Shown here: positions 2,691 to 47,300 of the stretch, piece after piece
Layout: each line of letters begins with the position of its first letter
Numbering within the stretch: the first letter of the stretch is position 1
NCBI RefSeq assembly: GCF_036365525.1
Contig: NW_027140807.1
Location: forward strand, 1,674,001-1,738,000
Length of the DNA stretch: 64,000 bases
Direction of reading: 5' to 3'
From: Heterodontus francisci
Lineage: Eukaryota
Translations under genes and position numbers: made by a program
The notes under the pieces: generated by a model
The model's database searches: none
The model's input: only the letters and a program-made list of their open reading frames with translations
What the model was told of the DNA's origin: nothing

Positions 2691-2771
2691 CAAACTCAGG
2701 AATCCGAGGAACAATTGACTAGAGAATCTACTGAGGTTTCATCCACTATCCACCGGGCTCTGGAAGCTAAG
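2691..2771 (+). pseudogene. 5'-truncated mucin-like exon of the upstream paralog
   Basis: CAAACTCAGGAATCCGAGGAACAA...GGAAGCTAAG|gtatct matches the 96-nt exon family. The acceptor and first ~14 nt are deleted (fused directly to minisatellite), and there is a further 1-nt deletion. Confidence 0.75.
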
Positions 2772-2819
2772 GTATCTGCTTTGTGGGGTTATCATCGCAG
2801 AATCATGGAATCAAAGACT

Positions 2820-4010: not shown

Positions 4011-4395
4011 CTGTTTTCTTTTCTCTCTCTTGTTCTCACTCATTCCAGATCTCCCTTACTCTTTTCTGTCTCACTCCTGTCGCCTTCCCTCCTTTTCTCT
4101 CATTCCTGCTCTCTGTTGTTCTCTGACTCCACTTTCCCCCTGTCGTTTCGCTGATCACTTTGATAATCTCCTGAATTTTCTCTGTTAGTTTTTTTTCCTT
4201 GTCGGAGTCGTAACTGATTCTGCAGCCGATGATGTCTGGTGTCTCCCCTCGGTAAAGGCTGGTATACATTGATTCAGTGTGTCGAGGGAGTTAGATTACA
4301 TACGAGAGGAGGTTCTGTGTTAAAACACTTCTGTCCACTCATCCAGCGTTCTGAATCCCAGTGAAATTCCTCTTGTCTTTATTTGATCCTCTCAG

Positions 4396-26347: not shown

Positions 26348-26396
26348 AATCTCACCAGTAAGATGTGGACTCTGCTGATCATTCTGGGTTACCTGT
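26348..26396 (+). CDS. Signal-peptide exon (MWTLLIILGYL|YSALT-DPC)
   Basis: Polypyrimidine tract + AG at 26346-26347; ATG at 26363 in AAGATG context; hydrophobic stretch; phase-1 donor GTGAGT at 26397. Confidence 0.85.
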
Positions 26397-29300
26397 GTGA
26401 GTAACTTTCATTCTCGACAAAGTTCACGCCCAGTACAACTGGAACAAGCTGTGCTTATTCACGCCATTAAATAGAATAATCTCCCAAATCTGATTGAAGA
26501 AATGTCTGCCACGGCAGGGAAGGAGATGATTGGAGGTCTGACTGTTAGTTTAAAAGAGCAGACGGAGGTGGAGAGGCAGAAAGGTTTAGGAGGCCAGACA
26601 TCTTGAAGCCACATCAGACAGTGTTGGAGGAAAGGGAGTGGAGGGAAGTTCGACAGGAGGCTTGGGTCAGAGAAACAGAGAGTTGGTGAAGATTACAGAA
26701 ATGAGGTGGGAGAGGCCGTAGAGGTCATGAAAGAATTTGAACAGGAAGATGGAAATTGTACATCAAAGGCATTTGCAGCTGTGAACCAATGTGTGTCAGT
26801 GAGCACAGGGGTGATGTGTGACTTCAACTTTCTGCAAGATAACATACAACAGCAGTGTGTTGGAGGAGACCTGACTTCTGGAAAGTGGAAGCTGGGAGGC
26901 TGGCCAGGAGAGGATTAGAAGATTTGATTCTCTCGAAGGTTGAGGGTTTTAGATAGAGGATTGGCTGAGGCAAAATCAGTGATGGCGGATATTAAGGAGG
27001 TTGTAATTGGCTGCCTTTGTGATGAAGAGGCTTCAGGGAAGGAAGCTGGGCTCAGTCGGAAGCAGGGCCGTGTGCTGATGAGAAATAGGAGAGGGGCAAG
27101 ATAGATTCTCGGGGTACCCTCGAGGTAACAGTGCCGGAGTGGGTAGGGAAGACACTGCAGGAGATTCTCTGGCTGAGACGAGGTTGGGTTGAGTGGAAGT
27201 AGGTGAGAGCAGTTCCACCCAGCTGGACTTGGAACGAGAGGTGTTGGCAGAGGGTAATGTGGTGAATTGTGTCAAAGACTGCCGACAGTTCGAGAAGGAT
27301 GATCAGAAACAGTATTCCTGACTTGGCTCTTGCAGCTTCACTGCTGCTCAAACCCTTCACCAGTTATTTGGCACCTCTAGACTTGACTATTCCAAAGACC
27401 TCCTGGCTGATCTCTCACATTCCACCTTCCGTACATTGAGGTCATCCAATACGATACTGCCCAAGTCCCGTTCACCTTTCATCTCCGTGCTCACTGACCG
27501 ACACTGGCTCCCGGTTCAGCAAGGCCTGGATTTCAATATTCTCACAATCGTTTTCAGATCCTTCCATCACCTCGCCGTTCCCTACTGCTGAAATCATCTC
27601 CAGCCCCACAACCCTCAGAGATCTCTGCGCTACTCTAATTCAGGCCTCTTGAGTATTCCCGATTTGAATCCCTTCCACCATTGGCAGCTGTGCCTTCACC
27701 TGCCGAGGCTTAACGCTATGGAATTCTATCCCTCAACTTCTCCGTCTCTCCACCTCTCTTTCATCCTTTCAGAGACTCCTTAAAACCTCCTCTTTGACAT
27801 TGCATTTGGCCACCTGCCCTACCAGCTGCTTCTGTGGATCAGTGTCAGTTCGGGATGGTAACACACCGATGAAGTGCCTTGGGGCATTTTATTCCATCAA
27901 AGGCACGACATAAATGCATATTGTTGTTGGTTTTGGGACTAAACGTTCCCTCTCCAGGACCCACCATTCACATTGGGTCGCTTGTTCTCCACCTGGCAGT
28001 TCTCGCTCCTCCTCCACTTTACATCTTTCCGACTGGGACGAAGTGAAGCTGAGATATTTACTGCTTTCTGTTACCTGAGAGCTGGTGGTTAATCCAGAAT
28101 AGGGAGGACTGTCTGTGAGCAGTGAGTTAGAGGGGGAGGCTGAGCTGGGAGACAGATGGAAACCCCATTCAAAGAAGGAGGAAATTTTCCAGCTTTAATC
28201 TGGGGGGTTTTGACCAGGGCGGAGGTTGTAACTGAGATTATTGGTATTTTGGGATGGTGAAAGGCGCTGTGTAACATTAACTGTACTTTATATTAACATT
28301 AAACATCTTTGTGTCACTCAATCACAGACTCTGCACTCACTGACCCGTGTGTAAATCATACAGTCCTGGACCAGCCCTGGAGGAGCATCGATTGTACAGG
28401 GACTGAGTGCTCCGGTCAGGTGAAGTGTGATCGGTATCTTGTTCAAGGATGGTACAGATTTAACAGGTAATGTAAAGGAACAAATTCTGGGTAAATCAGT
28501 TAATGAGGGAGGATTAAGGGATTTCCCCCAGTTTCTGGTACTCTCTGCTGGTACCAGTCTCTCTAAAAATTAATATTTACCATCAGTTCAAGGACTGACT
28601 CTGTGATTGTTGTTTCAGTTCTGGTGGATGGAAGATTCCGGACACTGTTGTCCCAGATAGCCACTGCTCCACAAAGCGTCCAGGCTGGTTACAGGGTAAT
28701 TTCAGCCTTTATAATATCAGATTTACATTCACTGTCCAGCACTGTTCACATGGGTTACATTCTTCAATATTTATAAACTCTCATTTCAGGTTCCCATCCC
28801 AGTGTGGGACAGGGGGAAGTAACACGGACAGTTTGTTTCAACAGGGATGGAAATCGCTGCCACAGGACCCAGAAAATAAAGATCAAAAACTGCAGCAGTT
28901 ATTTTGTTTATGCGCTGAAGCCTCCACCCGTCTGTAACGCTGCTTATTGCACAGGTAGATTGCTGTTTGTATATGGTGCAGATGGGTGATTCTGGGATGT
29001 CACATGTCACCCACAAAAATGAGACAGTTTGCGCACTGCCCTCCTTTTTGTGAGGGACACAGTGAATATCGGATCTGTAAAACAGGGTGAACTCTTCACT
29101 AAAACTCTAGGGAACTGAACCAGATGCTCGCTGTCTGGAGAGAGGGCTGGCATGTCTGGGTATTATTCTGTCAAGAATGCACTTGAGGATTCAGGTTTTC
29201 TAGTGAGTGTCAGACACAGCAGCAGGATCCTGACAGACTCTATGTGAAGGGCAGTCACTCTCGTCTCACCTCTTGAGTTCCACTCTTTTGTCCGTGTTTG

Positions 29301-32300
29301 AACCACAGCTATGATGAGGTCTGGAGCTGAGTGACCCTGGCGGAGCACAAACTGACCATCACTGAACAGGTAATTGCTGAGCAAGTATCATTTGATAGCA
29401 CTGTCGATGAGACCTTCCATCATTTTACTGATGATAGAGAGTAGACTGATGGGACGGTAATTGGGTGGGTTGAACTTGCCCTGCTTTGACTTGTCATGCT
29501 TTTTATGCACAGGACGTGCCTGAGCAGATTTACACATTGCAGGGTAGATGCCAGTGTTGTAGCTGTACCAGAATAGCTTGGCTCAGGATGCAACAAGTTC
29601 TGGAGCACAGGTCTTCAGTACTACTTCAGGGATATTGTCAGGGCCCATAGCATTTGCAGTATTCAATGCCTTCAGTCATTTCTTGATATCACCTGGAGTG
29701 AATCGAATTGTCATCTGTGATGTTGGGGACTTCAGGAGCAGGCCGAGGTGGATCATCTACTCGGCACTTCTGGCTGAAGATGGTTGCAAATGCTTGAGTC
29801 TTATCTTTCGCACTAATGTGCTGGGCTCCCTGATCTTTGAGGATGGGGATATTTCTGGGGCCTCCTCCTCCAGTTAGTTGTTTAATTATCTACTGCCCTT
29901 CATGACTGGATGTGGCAGGACTGCAGAGCTTAGATCTGATCCGTTGGTTATGGGATCGCTTAGCTCTGTCTATCACATGCTGCTTCTGCTGTTTGGCACG
30001 CAGATTGTCCTGGGTTGTAGTTTCACCAGGCTGACACCTCATTTTGAGGTATGCCTTGTGCTGCACTTTACATGCCCTCCTGCACTTTTCATTGAACCAT
30101 GTTTGGTCTCCTGGCTTGATGGTCATGAAAGAGTGGGGAATATACCGGACCATGAGGTTACAGATTGTGGTTGAGTACAATTCTGCTGCTGCTGTTGTTC
30201 CCACAGCACCTCATGGATGCCCATTGTTGCATTGCTAGATTTGTTTGAATCTATCCCATTTAGCATGGTGATAGTGCCAGACAACACGATGGATGGTATC
30301 CTCAATGTAAAGGCGGGACTTCGTCTCCACAAGGACTGTGCGGTGGTCACTCCTACCAATTCTTCTTTTTCTTTTGGGCCTCCTTATCTCGAGAGACAAT
30401 GGATACGCGCCTGGAGGTGGTCAGTGGTTTGTGAAGCAGCGCCTGGAGTGGCTATAAAGGCCAATTCTGGAGTGACAGGCTCTTCCACAGGTGCTGCAGA
30501 GAAATTTGTTTGTTGGGGCTGTTGCACAGTTGGCTCTCCCCTTGCGCCTCTGTCTTTTTTCCTGCCAACTACTAAGTCTCTTCGACTCGCCACAATTTAG
30601 CCCTGTCTTTATGGCTGCCCGCCAGCTCTGGCGAATGCTGGCAACTGACTCCCACGACTTGTGATCAATGTCACACGATTTCATGTCACGTTTGCAGACG
30701 TCTTTATAACGGAGACATGGACGGCCGGTGGGTCTGATACCAGTGGCGAGCTCGCTGTACAATGTGTCTTTGGGGATCCTGCCATCTTCCATGCGGCTCA
30801 CATGGCCAAGCCATCTCAAGCGCCGCTGACTCAGTAGTGTGTATAAGCTGGGGGTGTTGGCCGCTTCAAGGACTTCTGTGTTGGAGATATAGTCCTGCCA
30901 CCTGATGCCAAGTATTCTCCGAAGGCAGCGAAGATGGAATGAATTGAGACGTCGCTCTTGGCTGGCATACGTTGTCCAGGCCTCGCTGCCGTAGAGCAAG
31001 GTACTGAGGACACAGGCCTGATACACTCGGACTTTTGTGTTCCGTGTCAGTGCGCCATTTTCCCACACTCTCTTGGCCAGTCTGGACATAGCAGTGGAAG
31101 CCTTACCCATGCACTTGTTGATTTCTGCATCTAGAGACAGGTTACTGGTGATAGTTGAGCCTAGGTAGGTGAACTCTTGAACCACTTCCAGAGCGTGGTC
31201 GCCAATATTGATGGATGGAGCATTTCTGACATCCTGCCCCATGATGTTCGTTTTCTTGAGGCTGATGGTTAGGCCAAATTCATTGCAGGCAGACGCAAAC
31301 CTGTCGATGAGACTCTGCAGGCATTCTTCAGTGTGAGATGTTAAAGCAGCATCGTCAGCAAAGAGGAGTTCTCTGATGAGGACTTTCCGTACCTTGGACT
31401 TCGCTCTTAGACGGGCAAGGTTGAACAACCTGCCCCCTGGTCTTGTGTGGAGGAAAATTCCTTCTTCAGAGGATTTGAACGCATGTGAAAGCAGCAGGGA
31501 GAAGAAAATCCCAAAAAGTGTGGGTGCGAGAACACAGCCCTGTTTCACACCACTCAAGATAGGAAAGGGCTCTGATGAGGAGCCACCATGTTGAATTGTG
31601 CCTTTCATATTGTCATGGAATGAGGTGATGATACTTAGTAGCTTTGGTGGACATCCGATCTTTTCTAGTAGTCTGAAGAGACCACGTCTGCTGACGAGGT
31701 CAAAGGCTTTGGTGAGATCAATGAAAGCAATGTAGAGGGGCATCTGTTGTTCACGGCATTTCTCCTGTATCTGACAAAGGGAGAACAGCATATCAATAGT
31801 CGATCTCTCTGCACGAAAGCCACACTGTGCCTCAGGGTAGACGCACTCGGCCAGCTTCTGGAGCCTGTTCAGAGCGACTCGAGCAAAGACTTTCCCCACT
31901 ATGCTGAGCAGGGAGATTCCACGGTAGTTGTTGCAGTCACCGCGGTCACCTTTGTTTTTATAGAGGGTGATGATGTTGGCATCGCGCATGTCCTGGGGTA
32001 CTGCTCCCTCGTCCCAGCACAGGCATAGCAGTTCATGTAGTGCTGAGAGTATAGCAGGCTTGGCACTCTTGATTATTTCAGGGGTAATGCTGTCCTTCCC
32101 AGGGGCTTTTCCGCTGGCTAGGGAATCAATGGCATCACTGAGTTCCGATTTGGTTGGCTGTATGTCCAGCTCATCCATGACTGGTAGAGGCTGGGCTGCA
32201 TTGAGGGCAGTCTCAGTGACAGCATTCTCCCTGGAGTACAGTTCTAGGTAGTGCTCAACCCAGCGGTCCATCTGTTTGCGTTGGTCAGTGATTATGTCCC

Positions 32301-35300
32301 CCGATTTAGATTTGAGGGGGGTGATCTTCTTGATGGTTGGCCCAAGAGCTCTCTTCATGCCATCATACATTCCTCTGATGTTTCCGGTGTCTGAGGCCAG
32401 CTGAATATGACTGCATAGGTGTTACCAGTAGTCGTTTGCGCAACGCCTAGCTGTTCTTTGTGCAGTACTTCTGGCTGCTTTAAGTGCTGCGGATGTTAAA
32501 TCGCTGGGGGCTTTCTTGTAGTTCAAAAGTGCAATGCGCTTAGCGGCTATGACAGGTTCCAGCTCTTCATTATGAGATTGGAATCAGTCTGCATTTCTCT
32601 TCGCACTTTTGCCGTAGGTGGTCAAAGCTGACTCATAGATGGCGTCTCTGATGTGGGCCCACTTGGTCTCAGCATCCCCTGTGGGAGTGTTTTGAAGGGC
32701 TGTTACAAGTGAATTTAGAAATTTTTGTAACAGCTGTGGGTGAGAAATTCTGCTCGTGTTGATGCGCGGGTGGCCCTTCTGCTTGGAATGATGCAACTTC
32801 TTTGGTCTGAGTCTAACCTTGCTGCACACCAGGGAGTGGTCGGTGTCGCAGTCCGCACTGTGGAAGCTGCGTGTGATTGGAACACTGTTGAAGGCGGCTC
32901 GCCTTGTGACAATGAGGTCTAGCTGGTGCCAGCGACGTGATCTTGGGTGCCTCCATGAAACCTGGTGACAGGGTTTAGTGTGAAAGAACGAGTTGGTGAT
33001 GCAGAGGTTATGATAGGTACACAACTCAAGCAGTCTCTGCCCGTTCTCATTCATCCTTCCAACGCCATAGCGCCCAAGGCAGGAGGGCCATGAGTCATGG
33101 TCGGCCCCAACCCTGGCATTAAAGTCCCCCAGCAGGAATAGGTGTTCGGTGTTGGGGATGCTGCTAATGATGTTATGGAGTTGTTCATAGAACTGGTCTT
33201 TAGCTTCAGGTGCGGAGCAGAGTGTTGGAGCATAGATGCTGAGTAGGTGTACTGGACCAGAGGTGGTGAGCAGTCGGATGGACAGTATGCGTTCCGAGCC
33301 ATTTGAGGGAGGCTCTATCATGCTGAGCAAGGAGTTTCTGATGGCGAAGCCCACTCCATGCTGTCTTGGTTCTTCAGGATCCCTGCCCTGCCAGAAGAAG
33401 GTGTAGTCTTGCTCTGCTAGAGAGCCACTCGCGGGGAGGCGAGTCTCCTGAAGTGCTGCAATGTCCACATTGAATCTACTGAGCTCGTTGTTAATGATGG
33501 CGGTCTTCCGAGAATCGTTGATTTGTGTAAGGTCTTCCGACAGGCCAGGACACATAGTTCTGACGTTCCAGCTTGCAAAGCGAAGGGCTGGTACCTTCTT
33601 TCCTTTTTTCATGTTGTTTGGTGCGGTGTATCAGTCCACCTTTCGGGCAATGACCCTGAGCTCCAAGCACCCATTGAAGCAGGCAGACTGTGGCGGGACA
33701 GAACCTTATTGAGCGGAGGCTGCCCGGTTTGAGGCGGGCGGTAGCTGTCCAGTGAGGTGCAATGACCTCTCCCACCGACAAAGGCAACCCGTGGCGCCCA
33801 GTTTCTACGCCAATTTATCTGGACTTATAACCCGTAACTGCTGCCTTCCGTGTTGTTTCAGTCGCTGTGAGGCAACTATGGAGTGACCTCTCCATGGCGC
33901 ATGCCTGGGCAAATTTATGGAGGTTGAGAGTTGCCCAGTCGTCAAAGCCCCCCTCTCGGCCTTTCTGGTGGGGTCCAAAGGAGTGCAGGACACGACGTTT
34001 GGCACCAGTATGGCTGCAGGAACTGCCGGAAACATGCCAAAGGTGACACATGACCGCCTATGGGGTTCCGCTCCGGATTTTCTGTTAGGGTTTACTCCTT
34101 TAGCCTTGGTCTCTCCCGAGACGCCCACAAGGCAGTGGGCACTCCTACCAATACTGTCATGGATATGTGGCAGGCAGATTGGTGAGGATGAAGTCAAGTA
34201 TATTTTCACCTCTTGTTGATTCTGTCATCATCTGCCACAGTCGCAGACTAGCAGCTATGTCCTTTAGGACTCAGCCAGCTCGGTCAGGAGTGGGCGGCAG
34301 TGATTGAGGGGAGTGGGATGTAGTGAATGTGGGGAGTGGGATGTCGTGACTGAGGGGAGGGGGATGCAGTGACTGAGGGGAGTGGGATGCAGTGACTGAG
34401 GGGAGTGGGATGCTGTAATTGAGGGAAGTGGGATGTAGTGACTGATGAGTGAGATGTGGTAACTGATGGGAGTAGGATGTAGAGATGCGGGGAGTGAGGT
34501 GCAGTGCTTGAAGGAAATGGTACGGAATGATTCGGTGGACTGGGTGTGGTAACATAGAGAAGTGGGATGCAGTTATTGAGGGGAGTAGGATGCCGTGACT
34601 GAGTGGAGTGGGATACACAGACTGAGGGGAGTGGGATGCAGTGACTGAGGGGAGCTGGATGCAGTGACTGAGGGGAGTGTGATATAGTGACTGAGGGGAG
34701 TGGAATACAGTGACTGTGGGGAGTGTGATGCAGTGACTGAGGGGAGTGTGATACAGTGACAGTGGGGAATGGGATACAGTGACTGAGGGGAGTGTGATAC
34801 AGTGACTGAGGGGAGTGTGATACAGTGACTGAGGGGAGTGGGATACAGTGACTGAGGGGAGTGGAATACAGTGACTGTGGGGAGTGTGATACAGTGACTG
34901 AGGGGAGTGTGATACAGTAACTGAGGGGAGTGTGATCCAGTGACTGTGGGGAGTGGGATAAAGTGACTGAGGGGAGTGGAATACATTGACTGAGGGGAGT
35001 GGAATACAGTGACTGTGGGGAGTAGGATACAGTGACTGAGGGGAGTGTGATACAGTGACTGAGGAGAGTGTGATACAGTAACTGAGGGGAGTGGAATACA
35101 GTGACTGAGGGGAGTGGAATACAGTGACTGTGGGGAGTGGGATGCAGTGACTGAGGGGAGTGTGATCCCTTACATTTATCTTCACATCCTCCTCGCTTTC
35201 ACTTGTCACTTGAACTTTTCCCAGTTCTGATGTCAGGTCACATATTAACATTAAACATCTTTCTGTCACTCAGTCGCAGACTCTGCATTCACTGACCCGT

Positions 35301-38300
35301 GTGTAAATCACACAGTCCTGGACCAGCCCTGGAGGAGCATCGATTGTGATGACACTGGGTCCGGTCAGGTGAAGTGTGATGATAATCTTCACTTCGGATG
35401 GTACCGATTTAAAAGGTAATGTAAAGGAACAATTTCAGGGTAATCTAGTCAATTTGGGCAGAGTAAGGGACTTCCCCCAGTTTCTGGTCCTATTTGCTGG
35501 TACCAGTCTCTCTAACAGTTAATATTTACCATCAGTTCAGGGACTGACTCGATGATTGTTATTTCAGTTCTGTTGGATGGAAGATTCCAGAGACTGCTGT
35601 CCCACATCATCGCTGCTCCACAAATGTTACAGGCTGGTTACAAGGTAATTTCAGCCTTTATAATATCAGATTTACATTCACTGTCCAGCACTGTTCACAT
35701 GGGTTACTGTCTTCAATATTTATAAACTCTCATTTCAGGTTCCCATCCCAGCGTGGGACAGGGGGAAGTAACACGGACAGTTTGTTTACACTGGGGTACA
35801 AATCACTGCTACAAGGTCCATGAGATAAAGATCAAAAACTGCAGCAGTTACTTCGTTTATGAGTTGAAGTCGTTGTTTCGTTGTGCTGCGTATTGTACAG
35901 GTACTTTGATGCTTCTATATCATCCAGAGGGTGAAACTGGGATGTCCCGTGTCACCCACAGAAATGAGACGGTTTACTCGCTCCCCTCCTTATTGTCAGG
36001 GACACAGTGAATAAAGGATCTGAAACACAAAGTGTACTTCACTGAAACTCTCGGGAACTGAACCAGACTCTGCTGTCCCTGTCTCTCAGGCACTCTGATC
36101 CCTGCAGTGTTCATGGCTCACGTCAGGTCCCCACTGCAGTGCTGGGCACCTCACACTCCCTCTCCAGGAAACAATGTTCATGAAGAGTCGGATTGGATGG
36201 TCGAGTGTTTGATAAAGATGAAAATCTGACACTGTCTGGACTCGAGTACTGAATACATGAGCTCTTTGGGTTTTCTCCACTCTACCCTCTTCCTTTATTA
36301 CAGATCCAGAGACTGTCGCAACTGAGGAACCCGAGGAACAAACAACTCGAGAATCCACGAGGGGATCATCGTCTACCCCTGCGGTGTCTGGAACATCAGG
36401 TACCCCCCTTGTGGGTCCATTCGAAACAGGTTCCACACCCAATGTTACATCATAGAAGATCAGTCCTGGAGATCATCCAGTCTCTCACTGAGGGAAGTGG
36501 GATGGAGTGATTGAGGGAATTGGGATGGAGTGACTGAGGGGAGTGGAATGTAGTGACTGAGGGGAGTGGATGCGGTGACTGAGGGGAGTGGGATGGGGTG
36601 ACTGAGGGGAGTGGGATGGGGTGACTGAGGGGAGTGGGATGTAGTGACTGAGTGGAGTGGGATGTAGTGACTGAGGGGAGTGGGATGTGAACAAAGAACA
36701 AAGAACAAAGAAAATTACAGCACAGGAACAGGCTCTTCGGCCCTCCAAGCCTACGCCGATCCAGATCCTCTATCTAAACCTGTCGCCTATTTTCGAAGGG
36801 TCTGCATCTCTTTATTTCCTGCCCATTCATGTATCTGTCTAGATACATCTTAAAAGACGCTATCGTGCCCGCGTCTACCACCTCCACTGGCAATGCATTC
36901 CATGCACCCACCACCCTCTGCGTAAATAACTTTCCACGCATATCTCCCCTAACCTTTTCCCCTTTCTCTTTGAACTCGTGTCCCCTTGTAATTGAATCCC
37001 CCACTCTGGGAAAAAGCTTCTAGCTATCCACCCTGTCTATACCTCTCATGATTTTGTGCACCTCAATCATGTCCCCCCTCAAGCTCCTTCTTTCTAATGA
37101 AAATAATCCTAATCTACTCAACCTCTCTTCATAGCTAGCGCCCTCCAAACCAGGCAACATCCTGGTGAACATCCTCTGCACCCTCTCCAAATCATCCACA
37201 TCCTTTTGGTAATGTGGCGACCAGAACTGCACGCAGTATTCCAAATGTGGCCGAACCAAAGTCCTATACAACTGTAACATGACCTGCCAACTCTTGTACT
37301 CAATGACCCGTCCGATGAACGAAAGCATGCCGTATGCCTTCTTGACCACTCTATTGACCTGCGTTGCCACCTTCAGGGAACAATGGACCTGAACACCCAA
37401 ATCTCTCTGTACATCAATTTTCCCCAGGACTTTTCCATTTACTGTATAGTTCACTCTTGAATTGGATCTTCCAAAATGCATCACCTCGCATTTGCCCTGA
37501 TTGAACTCCATCTGCCATTTCTCTGCCCAACTCTCCAATCTCTCTATATTCTGCTGCATTCTCTGACAGTCCCCTTCACTATCTGCTACTCCACCAATCT
37601 TAGTGTCGTCTGCAAACTTGCTAATCAGACCACCTATTCTTTCCTCCAAATCATTTATGTATATCACAAACAACAGTGGTCCCAGCACGGATCCCTGTGG
37701 AACACCACTGGTCACACGTCTCCATTTTGAGAAACTCCCTTCCACTGCTACTCTCTGTCTCCTGTTGCCCAGCCAGTTCTTTATCCATCTAGCTAGTACA
37801 CCTTGGACCCCATGCGCCTTCACTTTCTCCATCAGCCTACCATGGGGAACCTTATCAAACGCCTTACTGAAGTCCATGTTTCCGACATCTACAGCCCTTC
37901 CCTCATCAATCAACTTTGTCACTTCCTCAAAGAATTCTATTAAGTTGGTAAGACATGACCTTCCCTGCACAAAACCATGTTGCCTATCACTGATAAGCCC
38001 ATTTTCTTCCAGATGGGGATAGATCCTATCCCTCAGTATCTTCTCCAGCAGCTTCCCTACCACTGACGTCAGGCTCACCGGTCTATAATTACCTGGATTA
38101 TCCCTGCTACCCTTCTTAAACAAGGGGGCAACATTAGCAATTCTCCAGTCCTCCGGGACCTCACCCGTGTTTAAGGATGTAGCAAAGATATCTGTTAAGG
38201 CCCCAACTATTTCCTCTCTCGCTTCCCACAGTAACCTGGGATAGATCCCATCCGGACCTGGGGACTTGTCCACGTTAATGCCTTTTAGAATACCCAACAC

Positions 38301-41300
38301 TTCCTCCCTCCTTATGCCGACTTGACCTAGAGTAATCAAACATCTGTCCCTAACCTCAACATCCGTCATGTCCCTCTCCTCGGTGAATACCAATGCAAAG
38401 TATTCATTTGGAATCTCACAGATTTTCTCTGACTCCACACATAACTTTCCTCCTTTGTCCTTGAGTGGGCCAATCCTTTCTCTAGTTACCCTCTTGCTCC
38501 TTATATATGAATAAAAGGCTTTGGGATTTTCCTTAACCCTGTTTGCTAATAATATTTCATGACCCCTTTTAGCCCTCTTAATTCCTCGTTTCAGATTGTG
38601 CCTACAATCCCGATATTCTTTCCAAGCTTCGTCATTCTTCAGCCGCCTAGACCTTATGTATGCTTCCTTTTTCCTCTTAGCTGGTCTCACAATTTCACCT
38701 GTCATCCATGGTTCCCTAATCTTGCCATTTCTATCCCTCATTTTCACAGGAACATGTCTCTCCTGCACACTAATCAACCTCTCTTTAAAAGCCTCCCACA
38801 TATCAAATGTGGATTTACCTTCAAACAGCTGCTCCCAATCTGCATTCCCCAGCTCCTGCCGAATTTTGGTATAGTTGTCCTTCCCCCAATTTAGCACTCT
38901 TCCTTTAGGACCACTCTTGTCTTTGTCCATGAGTATTCTAAACCTTACGGAATTGAGATCACTATTCCCAGAGTAGTCCCCTACTGAAACGTCAACCACC
39001 TGGCCCGGCCCATTCCCCAACACCAGGTCCAGTATGGCCCCTTCCCGAGTTGGACTATTTACATACTGCTCTAGAAAACCCTCCTGGATGCTCCTTACAA
39101 ATTCTGCTCCATCTAGACCTCTAACACTAAGTGTATCCCAGTCAATGTTGGGAAAATTAAAATCTCCTATCATCACCACCCTGTTGCTCTGACAGCTTTC
39201 CATAAACTGACTGAGTGGACTGTGATGTCGTGATTGAGGGGATTGGGATGTAGAGAATGCGGGGAGTGGCATGCAGTGATTGAGGAGAGTGGGATGATGT
39301 AATTGAGGGGAGTGGGATGTAGTGAAGGAGGGGAGTGGGATGAAGTAATTGAGGGGAGTGCTATGCAGTGACTGAGGGGAGTGGACTGAGGCAATTGAGG
39401 GGAGTGTGATTGAGCGACTGAGGGGAGTGGGATGCAGTGACGGAGGGGTGTGGGATGATGCAGTTGAGGGGAGTGGGATGATTCAATTGAGGGGAGTGGG
39501 ATGCCGTGACTAAGGGGAGTGGGATGCAGTGACTGCGGGGCGTGGGATGCATTGACTGAGGGGAGTGGGATGCAGTGACTGAGGGGAGTGGGATGATGTA
39601 ATTGAGGGGAGTGGCATGCAGAGACTGAGGGGAGTGGGATGCAGTGGCTGAGGGGAATGGGATGGAGTGACTGAGGGGAGTGGGATGGGCTAACTGAGGG
39701 GAGTGGGATGCAGTGACTGAGGTGCATGGGATGCAGTGACTGAGGGGAGTGGGATGAAGTAATTGAGGGGAGTGGGATGCAGTGACAGAGGGGAGTGGGA
39801 TGCAGTGACTGAGGGGAGTGGGATGATGTAATTGAGGGGAGTGGGATTTCGAGACTAAGGGGATTGAGAAGATATGATTGAAGGGAGTGTGATTCAATGA
39901 CTGAGGGCAGTGACATTTTATGACTGGGTAAAATGTAATGCAGTTCCTGTGCCAACTGGGATACAGTGAGTGTGGACATGTGGATTGTCTCACAATGGTT
40001 TTTATATACACTAGCATCTGTGATTTACTGTACTCTAATCTATCCAGTTCGAACTTTCTCTCACTCCTTCCCTCCCCCATGTTTCTTTCCCTTTATTACA
40101 CATCCAGAGACTTCAACAACCTCAAGAACCAAGGAGCAAACAACTCCACAATCCATTGAGAAAGCACCATCTAACCCAATCGATACTTTCACCTCAGGTG
40201 TCAGTTTTATGTTGTTCAATCGGGACGGGTTGATTCTTACACTGACTGCCTGATTTGGGTGAATGGAATCTACCGCACAGGAAGAGGCCACTCGGCCCCT
40301 CTTGCTACTCCTCTTCATCTAACCTTTTCCTTCCTTTTCCTTTCTCCCTCAGGTGTTTAACCAGATTTACCTTAAATTTCATTTCCCTCGACCATTCAGG
40401 ATTAATTCTACATTCTCACTACACCTTGGTGTACTTGTCCATAGTTCACTGAAGGCAGCAGCACAGGTCGATCATGTGGTTTGGAAGGTATATGGGATAC
40501 TTGCCTGTCTTAGCCGAGGCACAGAATATAAGAGCAGGGCGGTTATGATGGAGCTGTACAAAACGCTAGTTTGGCCACAGCTGGAGTACTGAGAACAGTT
40601 CTGGGCACCACAATATAGGAAGGATGTGATTGCACTGGAGAGGGTGCAGAGGAGATTCACCAGGAGGTTGCCTGGGCTGGAGCATTTCAGCTGAGAAAAG
40701 AGGCTGGATAGGCTATGGTTGTTTACCTTAGAGCAGAGAAGGCTGAGGGGGGACCTGATTGAGGTATACAAAATTATGAGGGGCGTTGATCGGTTAGATT
40801 GGAAGAAACTATTTCCCTTAGCGGAGGGGTCAGTAACCAGGAGGAATAGACTTAAGATAAAAGGCAAGAGGTTTATAGGCGATTTGAGGAAACAGATTTT
40901 CACCCTGAGGGTGGTTGGAATCTGGAACACACTGTCTGAAGAGGTGGTAGAGGCATGAACCCTCACAACATTTAATAAGTATTTAGATAAGCACTTGAAA
41001 CGCCGCAGCATACATGATTACGGGCCAAGTGCTGGAAAATGGGATTAGAATAGCGACGTGCTTGATGATCGGCATGGACACGATGGGCCGAAGGGCCTGT
41101 TTCCATGCTGTATAATTGTATGAGTCTAGGGCTGTGACGCACTTTTGAGTAAAGAGGCTTCCTCTGAAATCACCACTGGATTTACTTGTGACAGTTTTAT
41201 TTTCTATCCCTCTCTCTCCACCCTCCTCTCCCACTACCTCTTTCTGCACTTCCTGTCAGTATCTCTTTTGCTCTCTGTGTATCTTTCTCTTTATATCTCT

Positions 41301-44300
41301 ATATTTGCTCTCTCTCTCACTGCCATTTTCACTCAGTCTCTGTCTATCTCTATCTGACAATTTCGTTTTCCCTCTGTCTCTCTCTTTATCTCTGTAACTC
41401 ACTGCTCTCACCCTTTCGCTTCTTCTCTCGCTGTCTGTATCTGTTGCTCTCACTCTCGGACTCTTTCTTGATCTCTCACATTTTCTATCGCTCTCTTTCT
41501 TCTCATTTTTCTCTCCCTCTGTTGCCCTCTTTCACTCTGTCTCCCACTCTCACTGTCTCTAACTCTCACACATTATCTCTCACTCGCAGTGACTGAGGGC
41601 AGTGGGATGCATTGACTGATGGGAGTGGGATGCATTGACTGAGGGGAGTGGGATGTAGTGACTAAGGGCAGTGCAATGTAAAGGCAGAGGGATGGTGGGG
41701 TGTAGTGACTGAGAAGAGTGGGATAGACTGATGGAGGTGAACGGGATGCAATGACTGAGGGGACTGGGATGGAGTGGCTGAGCGGAGTTGTGTGAAAGGT
41801 TTGAGGGGAGTGAGTTGCAGTGAATGAGGGGAATGGAATACTGTGACTGATATTAGATCCAGAGAGTGAGGGAGAGTGGGATGCCGTGACTGAGGGCAGT
41901 GCGATGGCCTGACTGAGGGAGTGGGATGTTGTGACTGAGGGAAGTGGGAGTGCGAGTTAGAGCCTGAGAGGAGTGGGATGTAGTGACAGAGGGAGGTGGG
42001 ATGCAGTGACTGAGGGGAGTGGGATAGACTGACGGAGCTGAGTGGGATGTAGTGACCTATGGGAGTGGGATGCGGTGACTGAGGGGAGTGGAATGTAGAG
42101 ACCGAGGGTTGTGGGTTACACAGGCTGAGGGGAGTGTAATACAGTGACTGAGGGGAGTGTGATACAGTGACTGAGGGGAGTGGGATACAGCGACTGAGGG
42201 GAGTGGGCAAAAGCGACTGAGGGGAGTGGGATACAGCGACTGAGGGGCATGGGACACAGCGACTGAGGGGAGTGGGATACAGTGACTGAGGTGAGTGGGA
42301 TACAGTAATGTAGTGATAAGGATGGAAGATGATGGATTTATAAAGATTGATATCTCACTTTCTCCTGACACTCGTACCATCCTGTCGAAATGTTGTGTTT
42401 TTCTCCATCTCTCACTCTGCAATGTTTGCCTCCCTTTCTAACAGAGCCCATGACTTCCCAAACTCAGGAATCCGAGGAACAATCGACTGGAGAATCCATT
42501 GAGGTTTCATCCTCTATCCTAGTGGGCTCTGGAACCCTAGGTATCTGCCGTGCCGGACTATAATTATAGAATGATGGAATCAGAGACTGGTTACAGCACA
42601 GAAAGAGGCCATTCAGCCCATCGTCACCGTGCCAGCTCTCTGCCAGAGCAATCCACCTACTCGCTCTCCTGCCATTTCCCCATCACCCAGCAGACTGTTT
42701 CTCCTATGATAATTTTCCAATTCCCTTTTGAAAGCCTCAATTGAACCTGCCTCCAGCGCACTCTCAGGCAGTGCACTCCAGACCCTAACCACTCGCTGTG
42801 TGAAAAGGTTTTCCTGTCTCTGTTGCTACTTTTACCACTCACCTAAAACCGGTGTCCTCTGGTTCTGGATTCTCCCACCAATGGGAACAGTTTCTCCCTG
42901 TCTGCTCTGTCCACATCCCTCGTGATTTTGAAAACCTCCATCAAATCTTCTCTTAATCTTCTCTTCTCCAGGGAGAACAGCCCCATCTTCTCCAATCTAT
43001 CCAAGTAACTGACGTCCCTCATCCTGGGAAACATTCTTGTAAATCATCTCCGCACCCTCTCGAATACCTTAACATCCTTTCTAAGTATTAACCGCTCTCA
43101 CGACCTGTCTTGCCACCTTCAATGATCTGTGCACATGTGCCCCCAGGTCCCTCTGCCCCTGCACCCCTTTCCAATTGTATCCTTTATTTTATATTGCCTC
43201 TCCTCCTTCTTCCGACCAAAATGCATCACTTCACAATTCTCTGCATTAAATTTCATCTGCCACTTGCCTGCCCATTCCACAGGTCTGCCTAAGTCCACTT
43301 GAAGTCCATCACTATCCTTCTCACTGTTCACAACACTTCCAGGTCTTGTGCCCTCCACAAATAAGGTTGTTGAGCTGCAGGCGCAGATAGCCACGTGGAA
43401 ATATGCTGTTGTGGCAATAACCGAGTCCTGGTTCTAAGAGAGGCAGGACTGGGTAGTGAATATTCCTGACTACAAGGTGTTCAGGAAAGAGAGGGGAGGA
43501 AGGAAAGGAGGAGGGGCATCAGTATTGTTTAAGGGGAGAATTACAGTGCTGGAAGGAGATGATGTCGCAGAGGAACCAAGGATAGAATCCATCAGATTAA
43601 AGTGAAACAACGAAAGAAATACCATGACCTTTCTGGGTGTATGTTCTAGGCCAACAACTAGTGGGAAAGATATAGATGAACAGATTTGCATAGAGCAACC
43701 AAGAGATGCAAGAGTTAAAGTGTAGATATATCATTGGGCAATAATTATCTGAATATAGTCTGGAATAGTAATAGTGTAAAGGGCACAGAGGGACAAGAGT
43801 TTCTCGAATATGTTCAGGAGAATTTCCTACGTCAGTTTGTTTCCAGTCCAACGAGGAAGGAGGCATTGCTGGATCTGATTCTGGGAAATGAGGTTGGACA
43901 AGTGAATTAAGGGTCAGCCGGGGAATATTTGGGGACAGTGACCAGCGTATCATATGGTTTAGGTTGGCAATGGAAAGTGACAAGGAGAAATCCAGAGGAA
44001 AGATAATTCATTGAGGGAGAACCAATCTCAATAGAGTGAGAACAGATCTGACCCAAATAATCTGGAATCATATTACAGAGTCCCACACTGTGACGCCTGA
44101 AGTGCTCATTCCAAGAGACGCATCCAGTCTCTTAATGATGGAGTGTGGGGCAATGATAGAGGGCAGTTGGAAAACAGTGACTGAGGGGAGAGGGATCTCG
44201 TGACTGAGGGGGGCGGGGTGGGATGCAGTGACCGAGGGGATTGGGATGCAGTGACTGAGGGCAGCGGGACATAGTGACTGAGGGCAGTGGGACATAGTGA

Positions 44301-47300
44301 CTGAGGGCAGTGAGATTTAGTGACTGAAGGGAGTGTGATGTATTGACTGTGCGCATTGGGATACAGTGACTGAGGAGATTGGGATACAGTGACTGAGGAG
44401 ATTGGGATACAGTGTCTGAGGGGAGTGTGATGCAGCAACTGAGGGGAGTGTGATACAGTCAATGAGGGAAGAGCGATACAGCGACTGAGGGAACGGTGAT
44501 ACAGTGACTGAGGGAAGTGTGATACACTGACTGAGGGAAGAGCGATACAGTGAGAAAGGGGAGTGTGATACAGGGACTGAGGGAGTGTGACATAGTGACT
44601 GAGGGGAGAATGATACAGCGACTGAGGGGAGTGTGATACAGCGACTATGGCAGTGTGATACAGTGACTGAGGGGAGTGTGATACAGGGACTGAGGGGAGT
44701 GGAATACAGTGACTGAAGGGAGTGTGATACAGTGACTGAGGGGATGGGACACAGTGACTGAGGGGAGTGTGATGCAGCGACTGAGGAGAGTGTGATACAG
44801 CGACTGAGGGGCGTGTGATTCAGTGACTGAGGGGAGTGTGGAACAGTGACTGAGAGGAGTGTGATACATTGACTGAGGGGAGTGCGATACAGTGACTGAG
44901 GGGAGTGGGATCGGGCGACTGAGATGACTGTGATACAGTGACTGAGATGAGTGTGATGCAGTGACTGAGGGGAGTGTGATAGAGACAGAGGGGAGTGTGA
45001 CGCCGTGACTGAGGGGAGTTTGACACAATAATGTAGTGAACAGATGGAAGATTATGGTTTTATAAAGATTGATATCTGACATTCTCCTGACACTAGTACC
45101 ATCCTTTTGACCTGTTGTGTGTTTCTCCGTGTCTCACTCTGCAATGTCTCCCTCCCTTTATTACAGAACCCGTGACTTACGAAACTCAAGAATCCGAGGA
45201 ACAATCGACTGCAGAATCCACTGAGGGGCCCTCCTGTATCCCAGCGGGCTCTGGAAGCTCAGGTATCTGCCTTGTGGGGTTATCATCGCAGAATCATGGA
45301 ATCATAAACCGGTTACAGCACAGAAAGATGCCGTTCAGACAATCGTCACCGTGCCAGCTCTCTGCCTGAGCAACTCAACTGCTCCCACTCCCGCTCCCAC
45401 TCCCACTCCCACTCATTTCCCCATCTCCCTGCAGATTGTTTCTCCTATGATAATTATCCAATTCCCTTTTGAAAGCCTCAATTGAACCTGCCTCCAGCAC
45501 ACTCTCAGGCAGTGCATTCCAGACCCTAACCACTCGCTGTGTGAAAAGATTTTCCTGTCTCTGTTGCTACTTTTACCACTCACTTAAAGCCAGTGCCTTC
45601 TGGTTCTGGATCCTCCCACCAATCGGAACAATTTCTCCCTGTCTACTCTGTCCACATCCCTCGTGATTTTGAACATCTCGGTCAAAACACCTCTTAATCT
45701 TCTCTTCTCCAGGGACAAGAGCCCCAGTTTCTCCAATGTATCCATGTTACTGACGTCCCTCATCCCAGGAACCATTCTCGTAAATCATTTCCGCACCCTC
45801 TCGAATACCTTCACAGCCTTCCTAAGTATTAACCGCTCTCTCGACCTGTCTTGCCACCTTCAATGATTTGTGCACACGTCCGCCCAGGTCCCTCTGCCCC
45901 TGCACCCCCTTTGCAATTGTATCCTTTATTTTATATTGCCTCGCCTCGTTCGTCCGACCAAAATGAATCACTTCACAATTCTCTGCGTTAAGTTTCATCT
46001 GCCACTGTCTGCCAATCCCACCAGCCTGTCTATAACCCCCTGACGTCTATCACTATCCTCCTCACAGTTTACAATACTTCCAGGTTTTGTGTCATCTGCA
46101 AATCTTGAAATTGTGGCATGTACACCCCAGTCTATGTCATTAATATACATCAGGGAAAACAGGGGTCCGAGCAATATTACAGAGCAAAACACAGATGCAC
46201 AGAGAATTAGGAGGGACAGATAACACTGGAGTAGAAAAGAGTAACGTATTAGACAGGGACAGTGTAAGAGGGAAGGTGATGAGCTGTAAATTCAGTTCAA
46301 TGTGTGTGTATATGAGAATGCAATGAGAGTGGTAAAAAAGGTTGTTGAGCTGCAGGCGCAGATAGCCGTGTGGAAATATGCTGTTCTGGCAATAACAGAG
46401 TCCTGGCTCTAAGAGGGGCAGGACCTGGTAGTGAATATTCCTGACTACAAGGTGCTCAGGAAAGGGAGGGATGGAAGGAAAGGAGGAGGGGTATCAGTAT
46501 TGATAAAGAGGAACATTACAGTGCTGGAAAGAGATGATGTCGGAGAGGAACCAAGGATAGAATCCATCAGATTAGAATGAAACAACGAAAGAAATACCAT
46601 TACCTTTCTGGGTGTATTTTATAGGCCAACAAGTAGTGGGAAAGATATAGAGGAACAGATTTGCATAGAGCAACCAAGAAGTGCAAGAGTTAAAGTGTAG
46701 ATATATCGTTGGGCTTTAGTTATCTGAATATAGACTGGGATAGTAATAGTGTAAAGGGCAGAGAGGGACAAGAATTTCTAGAGTGTGTCCAGAAGGATAC
46801 CCTCCGTCAGTTTGTTTCCAGTCCAATGAGGAAGGAGGCATTGCTGGATCTGGTTCTGGGAAATGTGGTTGGACAAGTGAATTATGGGTCAGTCGGGGAA
46901 CATTTAAGGGACAGTGACCATCATATCATGTAGTTTAGGTTGGCAATGGAAAAGGACAATGAGAAATCCGGAGGAAAGATAATTCATTGAGGGAGAACCA
47001 ATCTCAATAGAGTGAGAACAGATCTGACCCAAATAAACTGGAATCATATTATAGACACACATAGCGTGACAGCTGAAGTGCTCAGTCTCAGTGACCCATC
47101 CAGTCTCTTACTGATGGAGTGTCGGCAAATGACAGAGGACAGTGGGATATAGTGACCGAGGGGAGTGGGATGTAGTGTCTGAGGGGTGAGGGATGTAATG
47201 ACTGAGGGGAGAGGGATATAGTGACTGTGGGCAGTGGGATATAGTGAGTGAGGGGAGAGGGATGCAGTGACTGAGGGGAATGGGACATCGTGACTGAGGG

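What the first reader, a model, noticed from the sequence alone, without database searches (positions are those of the whole stretch)
28328..35900. Two decoy modules differ mainly by clustered amino-acid replacements, a signature of diversifying selection
Hand alignment of ~125 codons gives about 34 replacement codons and 2 clean codon indels, against about 10 synonymous-only differences. Changes cluster in inter-cysteine segments (TGTEC/DDTG-, RYLVQ/DNLHF, DSHC/HHRC, KRP/NVT, FNRDGNRCHRTQK/LHWGTNHCYKVHE, PPPVCN/SLFRC-), and several codons differ at all three bases. Framework stretches are unchanged, and the 94-nt intron differs at only 2 positions (the 152-nt intron is ~86% identical). Inference: CDR-like loops on a GP2-type scaffold, as expected for ligand or pathogen recognition.
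Basis: partly seen in the sequence, partly recalled or inferred. Interest (0 to 1): 0.85.

Follow-up and report, generated by a model that had tools for sequence, protein, structure and literature searches.

The report
Two shark D10C domains, patchy divergence
Two neighbouring three-exon cassettes encode the two uromodulin/GP2-type (D10C) head domains of one secreted shark protein. They differ in a few family-wide hypervariable patches on an otherwise frozen scaffold, which fits selection for diversity but is equally explained by old domain-type differences plus gene conversion, so positive selection is not shown.

Summary
There are 80 identical, 10 synonymous-only, 34 replacement and 2 indel codons. 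Eight codons differ at all three bases. Intron 2 differs at 2 of 94 positions and intron 1 is 86% identical.

- Pairwise dN/dS is 0.61 (NG86) or 0.75 (ML). That is not above 1, though far above 0.2.
- Exons (17.6% different) are no more diverged than intron 1 plus the 3' flank (15.9%).
- Only a 157-nt tract around intron 2 is anomalously alike (4 differences), which points to a gene-conversion tract.
- Sites that vary among seven other Heterodontus francisci modules hold 33 of the 36 A/B differences.
- At the 19 most variable sites dN is 0.80, about 4.5 times noncoding divergence, but omega against local dS is 1.3 and not significant.
- At the 72 invariant sites omega is 0.09.
- Five differences are ancient markers of the stalk-proximal module type, shared with other shark orders.
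- About twenty are variants re-assorted among modules (PHI-type test p=0.004).

Both modules have the GP2 D10C fold and the GP2 N65 sequon, but lack the beta-hairpin and the ZP module. RNA contigs of paralogues show both modules spliced in tandem.

The scan noted the same signature on other DNA of this genome (s1-872564, s1-873622; family follow-up s1-872196).

The parts
26363..26396 (+). Signal-peptide exon (MWTLLIILGYL plus one base, phase 1; donor GTGAGT at 26397)
   Evidence: Phase-1 donor scan and sequence. The peptide equals the N-terminus of H. francisci paralogues P0010 and P0162. A paralogue RNA contig joins 26395 to 28321.
28328..28466 (+). Module A exon 1. Holds C1, the N9-H-T sequon, hypervariable patches 1+2 (codons 22-39, 28393-28446) and beta strand GWYRF
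   Evidence: RNA contigs of paralogues cover it, and depth is zero in the flanking intron.
28467..28618 (+). Module A intron 1 (152 nt), 13.8% different from B intron 1
28619..28695 (+). Module A exon 2. Holds hypervariable patch 3 (codons 54-67, 28641-28682)
   Evidence: A weak Pfam D8C_UMOD hit. Paralogue contigs replace exactly this patch (table 5c).
28681..28837 (+). Low-divergence tract (end of exon 2, all of intron 2, start of exon 3): 4 differences in 157 nt. Candidate gene-conversion tract. The B counterpart is about 35630-35786
   Evidence: 0 of 5000 permutations as low. Intron 2 against intron 1, Fisher p=0.0014.
28790..28954 (+). Module A exon 3. Holds patch 4 (codons 88-100, 28837-28875; beta-hairpin tip) and patch 5 (codons 113-121, 28912-28938)
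   Evidence: Pfam PF23283 at 28.0 bits (cut-off 27). Also.
30421..33612 (-). LINE retrotransposon in the A-B intron (endonuclease plus reverse transcriptase; ORF broken)
   Evidence: ORFs. Pfam RVT_1 at 1.3e-32 and Exo_endo_phos at 6e-13.
34287..35166 (.). 23-nt satellite, 38 copies, just upstream of module B
35280..35415 (+). Module B exon 1. It probably begins at 35274, using the upstream acceptor CTCAG, which adds the codons V-A. One codon (Cys27) is deleted
   Evidence: Paralogue RNA uses the equivalent upstream acceptor (joint 28954->28322). The linker YCT-V(T/A)DSA appears in P0010, P0162 and P0012.
35568..35644 (+). Module B exon 2 (patch 3 reads PHHRCSTNVT and creates an N-V-T sequon)
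35739..35900 (+). Module B exon 3, with the B-type signature (V-H-E, K-S-L-F-x-C, one-codon deletion)
   Evidence: Pfam PF23283 at 30.9 bits. The B-type clade has SH-aLRT 96. Diagnostic sites are listed.
36304..55544 (+). Eight ~96-nt phase-1 stalk exons (starting near 36304, 40103, 42446, 45168, 47911, 49474, 52348, 55434), acidic and Ser/Thr-rich
   Evidence: blastn self-hits. tblastn of P0010, P0162 and P0108.
58093..58978 (+). Two tail exons (about 58093-58185 and about 58883-58978 with the stop). The C-terminus KHMFQDQCPHTKLELDPEDVQCSASEPVEV is identical to that of P0162

Best explanation
A and B are the first and second D10C (uromodulin/GP2-type) domains of one secreted shark protein. 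Its order is signal peptide, D10C-A, D10C-B, eight-exon acidic Ser/Thr stalk, then a small conserved tail. There is no EGF or ZP module.

Each domain is a three-exon, phase-1 cassette, and the pair goes back to an old cassette duplication. Their differences have three layers:
1. A few ancient, conserved markers of the stalk-proximal (B) domain type.
2. Many differences at five patches that are hypervariable across the whole family. Their variants are re-assorted between modules by gene conversion or unequal exchange.
3. A scaffold held by strong purifying selection and in part homogenised between the two cassettes by conversion. This explains the near-identical intron 2.

The patches flank the cysteines of the disulphide-rich pole of the domain. 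The conserved N-glycan sequon equivalent to GP2 N65 sits at the other pole.

The likely function is inferred, not shown: a secreted, mucin-borne glycoprotein that meets microbes or other ligands, with a constant glycan-bearing scaffold and a variable protein or glycan surface. Selection favouring or preserving diversity at the patches is probable, but this pair of sequences does not demonstrate it.
For: Architecture:
- Exon map and phases.
- H. francisci models P0010 and P0162 have the same order of parts.
- In RNA contigs, exon 3 of one module is spliced to exon 1 of the next (joint 28954->28322 in two runs). The signal exon is joined to exon 1. Depth is zero in unique intron sequence.

Fold and family:
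- Pfam PF23283.
- GP2 and UMOD chains at E=1e-24.
- Model against 7p6r: TM 0.83, rmsd 2.0 A, 40% identity.

Layer 1:
- On columns 87-130 the B-type forms one clade across Heterodontus, Hemiscyllium and Mustelus (SH-aLRT 96).
- Five diagnostic differences.

Layer 2:
- 33 of the 36 A/B differences lie on sites that vary among seven other modules (p=7e-13).
- dN is 0.80 at the 19 predefined hypervariable codons, against 0.18 for intron 1 plus flank (p=2.5e-6).
- Mosaicism: P0182 carries A's patch 1 on a B-type body, and the two modules of P0162 share patches 1-2.
- A PHI-type test gives p=0.0044, with 109 of 378 site pairs incompatible.

Layer 3:
- Omega is 0.09 at 72 invariant codons.
- The 157-nt tract holds 4 differences.
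- Framework residues in that tract are species-specific in both module types (SHPSVGQGEV in Heterodontus, SHPT(L/M)EQG(E/I)V in Mustelus).

Spatial inference:
- GP2 disulphides C2-C9, C3-C6, C4-C10 and C5-C7 (PMC8930769) join residues aligned to the edges of patches 1/2, 3, 4 and 5.
Against:
- Omega at the hypervariable sites against local dS is only 1.1-1.3.
- Silent change also looks raised in replaced codons (four-fold sites 2/8 against 2/39, p=0.13). That favours deeper ancestry of the patches over selection, but it is not significant.
- On the N-terminal 86 columns the B-type is not one clade, yet the AU test does not reject one (p=0.29). Concerted evolution of that part is therefore suggested, not proven.
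- The near-identity of intron 2 could reflect a functional intronic element instead of conversion.
- No contig near-identical to this gene's own module A was found, so expression of this particular copy is not shown.
- The one-surface claim rests on disulphide topology, not on coordinates.
Confidence: 0.55

Rival explanations
1. Pure diversifying (positive) selection. After a fairly recent cassette duplication, the amino-acid patches were driven apart by selection for new ligand or pathogen specificities, while introns and scaffold simply kept their original similarity.
For: - dN at the predefined hypervariable sites is about 4.5 times noncoding divergence and 2.7 times overall dS.
- Eight codons are changed at all three bases.
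- The hot spots are shared family-wide and across sharks.
- Ten or eleven differences are private to A or B, so they are recent.
- Sequons are gained and lost (A has N45, B has N64).
- The overall omega of 0.75 is far above 0.2 (p=8e-6).
Against: - Overall omega is below 1 and not distinguishable from 1.
- Omega at the hypervariable sites against local dS is not significant.
- The duplication is not recent, because the B-type is shared with other shark orders.
- Intron 1 and the flank are as diverged as the exons.
- About twenty of the differences are variants also present in other modules, which fits exchange and not new mutation.
Confidence: 0.2
2. No adaptive diversification. There are two old, sub-functionalised domain types whose distinguishing patches are kept apart by purifying selection, while recurrent gene conversion homogenises introns and scaffold. 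This is the 'islands of divergence in a sea of conversion' pattern known from X-linked opsin genes (from my own knowledge). Loop positions otherwise drift nearly neutrally.
For: - B-type markers are conserved across orders.
- The 157-nt tract is almost identical.
- Framework residues are species-specific in both types.
- Omega at the hypervariable sites is about 1.
- Silent differences tend to be higher inside replaced codons.
- There is a recombination signal.
Against: - Only 5 (at most about 9) of the 36 differences are type-diagnostic.
- Same-type modules of different genes differ at the same patches. For example, winB and P0108 differ at 3 residues in patches 1+2 and 4 in patch 4.
- Neutral drift does not readily give dN 4.5 times intron divergence unless the patches are much older than the introns.
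Confidence: 0.2
3. Module A of this particular gene is decaying or being lost from the transcript. In that case part of the A/B divergence would be relaxed constraint on A.
For: - Seven A residues are seen in none of the 33 other modules. They include K100 and A113, where nearly all others have E.
- The upstream acceptor used by paralogue transcripts is destroyed before A1 (CAA for CAG).
- No RNA contig near-identical to A was found.
Against: - The reading frame, all ten cysteines, the splice sites GT/AG and the N9 sequon are intact.
- A/B differences at sites invariant among the other Heterodontus modules are few (about 3 nonsynonymous changes in 72 codons).
- Contigs cannot show absence.
Confidence: 0.05

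Closest known systems
D10C domain of the human GP2 / uromodulin decoy module (PDB 7P6R, 7PFP; PMC8930769)
   Same: - The fold matches. The model of paralogue P0162 against 7p6r gives TM 0.83 and rmsd 2.0 A at 40% identity.
- The sequence matches at E=1e-24.
- Eight cysteines align to C1, C2, C4, C5, C7, C8, C9 and C10.
- The sequon at GP2 N65 (DPCxNxT), which carries the FimH-binding oligomannose in GP2, is kept in both A and B.
   Different: - There is no beta-hairpin in front of D10C, so the hairpin/D10C groove that shelters the glycan is missing.
- The C3-C6 disulphide is absent.
- An extra cysteine pair sits in a 4-residue insertion (C22, C27), and it is broken in B.
- Two D10C domains stand in tandem.
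- There is no EGF or ZP polymerisation module; the heads sit on a mucin-like stalk.
- The hypervariable patches have no described counterpart in GP2 or UMOD.
Zebrafish omcin family (omc1-15; PMC11415648)
   Same: - It is a lineage-specific tandem expansion of multi-D10C proteins in a fish.
- The gene cluster is proposed to act in antibacterial defence of mucosal tracts, and the omc5 mutant is infection-prone.
   Different: - Omcins carry five D10C domains, an EGF IV domain, a ZP module and a predicted GPI anchor, and are described as teleost-specific.
- The shark proteins are ZP-less, have one to five D10C domains on an exon-amplified stalk, and lie among TCR V segments according to earlier notes of this scan.
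Duplicated genes whose introns are homogenised by gene conversion while selected exon sites stay different (primate red/green opsins, MHC class II exon 2); from my own knowledge, not tested here
   Same: - Introns or parts of them are more alike than neighbouring coding patches.
- The sequence similarity is mosaic.
- Divergent sites are clustered at functional positions.
   Different: Here the units are domains within one protein as well as paralogous genes, and the function of the variable patches is unknown.

Membership tests
D8C/D10C domain (Pfam PF23283 D8C_UMOD) | Profile match above Pfam's gathering score | tested here: met
   Exon 3 of A scores 28.0 bits and exon 3 of B 30.9 bits (cut-off 27), each covering profile positions 34-88. 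Paralogue P0162 scores 75 bits with two stretches. Exons were searched one by one; the joined protein was not sent to any database tool.
D8C/D10C domain (Pfam PF23283 D8C_UMOD) | D10C fold as in the GP2 crystal structure | tested here: met
   AlphaFold2 model of paralogue P0162 (module pLDDT 80-95) against 7p6r_A/B: TM 0.83-0.84, rmsd 2.0-2.1 A over 127 columns. This was tested on the closest database paralogue, not on the window's own spliced protein.
D8C/D10C domain (Pfam PF23283 D8C_UMOD) | Ten conserved cysteines forming C1-C8, C2-C9, C3-C6, C4-C10 and C5-C7 | tested here: not met
   The alignment to GP2, read with the connectivity in PMC8930769, shows C3 replaced by V56 and C6 by R94 in A. 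Eight cysteines are conserved. A reaches ten only through a new pair (C22, C27) in an insertion. B has nine.
GP2/UMOD 'decoy module' (beta-hairpin + D10C presenting a high-mannose glycan to FimH) | Disulphide-stapled beta-hairpin packed against D10C | tested here: not met
   Only about 6 residues lie between the signal peptide, or the previous module's YCT, and the DPC motif. GP2 has residues 45-60 there (PMC8930769).
GP2/UMOD 'decoy module' (beta-hairpin + D10C presenting a high-mannose glycan to FimH) | N-glycan sequon at the GP2 N65 (or UMOD N275) position | tested here: met
   DPCVN-H-T in A and in B aligns with GP2 61-DPCQNYT-67. The sequon is kept in 6 of the 7 other H. francisci modules.
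GP2/UMOD 'decoy module' (beta-hairpin + D10C presenting a high-mannose glycan to FimH) | The glycan is oligomannose and binds a bacterial lectin | not testable with these tools
   This needs glycoproteomics and binding assays.
Uromodulin/GP2/omcin ZP-module filament proteins | EGF plus a C-terminal zona pellucida polymerisation module | tested here: not met
   Downstream exons are eight stalk exons and two tail exons. P0162 has Pfam PF23283 only. The shark relatives carry PF23283 almost alone (P0002 also PF25809), whereas the frog uromodulins there also carry PF00100.
Gene families under diversifying selection (criterion: dN/dS above 1 at a class of sites) | Omega significantly above 1, pairwise or at predefined sites | tested here: inconclusive
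   Pair: 0.61 by NG86 and 0.75 by ML, with p=0.37 against omega 1. Predefined hypervariable sites: 1.34 against local dS (19 codons) and 1.11 (54 codons). dN there exceeds noncoding divergence (p=2.5e-6) and overall dS (p=0.01). Mosaic ancestry confounds this. Multi-sequence site models were not possible because no paralogue DNA was available.

The most novel reading that the evidence does not exclude
The shark ZP-less D10C heads are a germline-encoded, diversified recognition family. In this reading a constant glycan-bearing scaffold carries five patches around the disulphide-rich pole that form one variable binding surface. Patch-wise gene conversion between dozens of cassettes, many embedded in the T-cell-receptor V arrays, creates combinatorial diversity that is kept by pathogen-driven selection. 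That would make it an innate counterpart of variable receptors, built on the uromodulin fold.
Probability: 0.2. Interest if true: 0.8.

Novelty: new variant of a known kind. Interest (0 to 1): 0.5.

Why it matters
Uromodulin and GP2 are the textbook soluble 'decoys' against bacterial adhesion. Their D10C domain is regarded as a constant scaffold for one glycan.

A large, unnamed elasmobranch family uses the same fold without the polymerising ZP module, in tandem copies on a mucin stalk. It has reproducible hypervariable patches and patch shuffling. This would extend the decoy idea to a diversified family in the oldest jawed vertebrates, placed within an antigen-receptor locus.

It also offers a clean system for separating gene conversion from positive selection, because there are dozens of three-exon cassettes with short introns. 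If the patches turn out to be merely tolerant loops, the finding reduces to an ordinary duplicated-domain gene.

Tried and rejected
No DNA of paralogous cassettes could be fetched, so PAML-type site models, GARD and intron trees were not run.
- The joined (spliced) A and B proteins were never sent to a database tool. Exons were searched one by one by reference. P0010 and P0162 served as proxies for the homologue, PDB and structure searches. The joined translation was used only inside sandbox scripts, for alignment, codon counts and a local profile to cut modules out of fetched proteins.
- The look-up of sequencing runs found only three small runs of one sample, with a 0-12% word share. When laid, they behave as RNA but hold paralogues 85-95% alike, and none is near-identical to this gene's module A. 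This copy's own expression and its own A3-B1 junction therefore remain unshown.
- Loop enrichment of the variable sites was tested and found not significant, so 'CDR-like loops' was dropped as a description.
- The AU test for B-type monophyly on the N-terminal part was not significant.
- Excess silent change in replaced codons was not significant.
- A literature search for a described shark D8C family returned nothing relevant.
I did not pursue this.
- Searches failed on a stop codon that lies in the intron ahead of the last exon. This was resolved by translation.

Full report
**What is there**

The window is shark DNA. The closest proteins are Heterodontus francisci RefSeq models.

Reading the stretch gives two three-exon cassettes.
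- Module A is 28328-28466, 28619-28695 and 28790-28954.
- Module B is 35280-35415, 35568-35644 and 35739-35900.
- Introns are 152 and 94 nt in both, and both cassette ends are phase 1.
- tblastn finds no third copy in the window.

The duplicated DNA runs from about 28289 to 29125, against 35241 to 36068. Between the cassettes lie a broken LINE on the minus strand and a 23-nt satellite.

**Check of the observation**

- 80 codons are identical, 10 differ only synonymously, 34 are replacements and 2 are indels.
- Eight codons differ at all three bases.
- Intron 2 has 2 differences in 94 nt. Intron 1 is 86.2% identical.
- Changed codons are clustered: 35 runs against 52.5 expected, p=0.0001.

**The gene**

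- A signal-peptide exon lies at 26363-26396.
- Eight ~96-nt phase-1 stalk exons lie between 36304 and 55544.
- Two tail exons end at the stop at 58976-58978.

Together with A and B these give a protein with the same order of parts as the H. francisci models P0010 and P0162: signal peptide, D10C, D10C, acidic Ser/Thr stalk, small tail.

Three small runs of one sample behave as RNA. Depth is zero over unique intron sequence and the contigs are spliced. They come from paralogues 85-95% alike and show three things:
- the signal exon joined to exon 1;
- exon 2 joined to exon 3, with P0162-type letters in patch 3;
- in two runs, exon 3 of one module joined directly to exon 1 of the next ('goes back 633').

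Tandem inclusion of two modules in one mRNA is therefore real for the family. This copy's own transcripts were not seen.

**Family and fold**

- Exon 3 of each module passes Pfam D8C_UMOD.
- P0162 matches human GP2 and uromodulin chains at about 1e-24.
- Its AlphaFold2 model superposes on the GP2 decoy-module crystal structure at TM 0.83 and rmsd 2.0 A.

I read the alignment with the disulphide map of PMC8930769.
- The shark module keeps C1-C8, C2-C9, C4-C10 and C5-C7.
- It lacks C3-C6.
- It has a new pair (C22, C27) in an inserted loop.
- B has lost C27 and so has nine cysteines.
- The sequon that carries the FimH-binding oligomannose in GP2 (N65, DPCQNYT) is conserved as DPCVNHT in both modules.
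- The beta-hairpin half of the decoy module is absent, and so are the EGF and ZP modules.

Relatives are numerous in sharks and rays. They are annotated only as 'uncharacterized', 'uromodulin-like', 'GP2-like' or 'mucin-5AC-like'. I found no paper on them. The nearest described parallel is the zebrafish omcin cluster, which keeps the ZP module.

**Is it diversifying selection?**

For the pair, dN is 0.179 and dS is 0.295, giving omega 0.61 by Nei-Gojobori. A maximum-likelihood codon model gives omega 0.75. This is not different from 1 (p=0.37) but is far above 0.2 (p=8e-6).

Exons (17.6% different) are no more diverged than intron 1 plus the 3' flank (15.9%). Only intron 2 stands out, at 2.1% (p=0.0014 against intron 1). 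It belongs to a 157-nt tract, 28681-28837, with 4 differences (0 of 5000 permutations as low). Its longest identical run of 64 nt is purely intronic.

To avoid circularity I defined variable sites from seven other H. francisci modules and then measured A against B.

| Site class | Codons | dN | dS | Omega |
|---|---|---|---|---|
| At least three states among the other modules | 19 | 0.80 | 0.60 | 1.34 |
| Invariant among the other modules | 72 | 0.018 | 0.20 | 0.09 |

- 33 of the 36 A/B differences fall on sites that vary in the other modules (p=7e-13).
- dN at the hypervariable sites exceeds noncoding divergence about 4.5-fold (p=2.5e-6) and overall dS 2.7-fold (p=0.01).

The hot spots and the frozen scaffold are therefore real. 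Whether the hot spots evolve faster than neutral depends on whether they share the genealogy of the introns.

**Evidence that they often do not share that genealogy**

(i) On the C-terminal 40 columns, the stalk-proximal modules of Heterodontus, Hemiscyllium and Mustelus form one clade (SH-aLRT 96). Five A/B differences are diagnostic of that ancient type: T98V, Q99H, P116S, P117L and the one-codon deletion.

(ii) About twenty differences are variants also found in other modules of either type.
- P0182 combines A's patch 1 with a B-type body.
- The two modules of P0162 share patches 1-2.
- A PHI-type test on the nine Heterodontus modules gives p=0.0044.

(iii) Framework residues in the low-divergence tract are species-specific in both module types, as expected from recurrent homogenisation.

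(iv) Silent differences tend to be commoner inside replaced codons, but not significantly.

On the other side, ten or eleven differences are private to A or to B. Same-type modules of different genes also differ at the same patches. Ongoing change at the patches is therefore real.

**Structure**

The variable sites are not enriched in coil (p=0.45). Patch 4 is the distal part of a long beta-hairpin, and patches 1-3 and 5 are mostly loops.

No coordinates are returned by the tools, so exposure could not be computed. There is an indirect argument. The GP2 disulphides C2-C9, C3-C6, C4-C10 and C5-C7 connect residues that align to the edges of patches 1/2, 5, 3 and 4. PMC8930769 describes a disulphide-rich region at the end of D10C opposite the hairpin/glycan groove. 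The patches therefore probably surround one pole, away from the conserved N9 sequon. This is an inference.

The patches also move N-glycan sequons. A has N45-S-S and B has N64-V-T.

**Verdict**

The reading 'signature of diversifying selection on CDR-like loops of a decoy module' is partly supported.
- There is a constrained D10C scaffold with family-wide hypervariable patches and unusually high replacement rates.
- The A/B pair gives omega below 1.
- Part of the contrast is ancient domain-type identity.
- The intron identity is best explained by gene conversion.
- The modules lack defining parts of the decoy module.

The most likely picture is a mosaic produced by old duplication, patch shuffling and conversion, with diversity-favouring selection probable but unproven.

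Other readers of this scan noted the same exon-faster-than-intron pattern on other pieces of this genome (s1-872564, s1-873622). A follow-up confirmed the family as real and unstudied (s1-872196). Those are leads, not evidence used here.

Noticed in passing
window 35349-35351 region (B exon 1, codon 27 deleted); A codons 22 and 27 at 28393-28410: Module B has nine cysteines. The family-specific extra pair C22/C27 in the inserted loop is broken by deletion of the C27 codon, leaving C22 unpaired. P0162 module 1 has the same state, and P0010 module 2 has lost both. A free cysteine could allow intermolecular bonding.
   Followed up: partly
It is destroyed before A1 (CAA), so A1 must use the AG at 28326-28327.
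   Followed up: partly
window 28432-28437, 28657-28659, 28843-28845, 28873-28875, 28912-28914, 28930-28932: Module A carries seven residues seen in none of 33 other shark modules: R35, Y36, S60, R90, K100, A113 and V119. At positions 100 and 113 nearly every other module has E. This could be a new specificity or relaxed constraint on this copy.
   Followed up: partly
window 34188-34298 and 45166-45366: The RefSeq model P0108 (H. francisci) starts its ORF in sequence 97% identical to 34188-34298, which is repeat-adjacent DNA just before the satellite. Its last 67 residues are 100% identical to a read-through of the stalk exon plus intron at 45166-45366. The model is probably a mis-built annotation of a near-identical locus or haplotype.
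   Followed up: no
window 28462-28464 (A N45-S-S) and 35620-35628 (B N64-V-T): The variable patches move N-glycosylation sequons between modules, while the GP2-N65-type sequon (N9) and N105-C-S stay fixed.
   Followed up: partly
window 26700-27915 and 29229-29300: Interspersed repeats in the signal-exon intron and just after module A draw very deep RNA-contig coverage, up to about 16,000 summed depth. These are expressed transposon families, unrelated to the gene.
   Followed up: no
window 2688-6222: A stalk exon and three tail exons of the upstream paralogous gene lie here (tail exon 93% identical to P0162 and a last exon with an identical C-terminal peptide).
   Followed up: partly
The three longest ORFs there gave no Pfam hit. 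The V exons may lie in other frames or be pseudogenes.
   Followed up: partly
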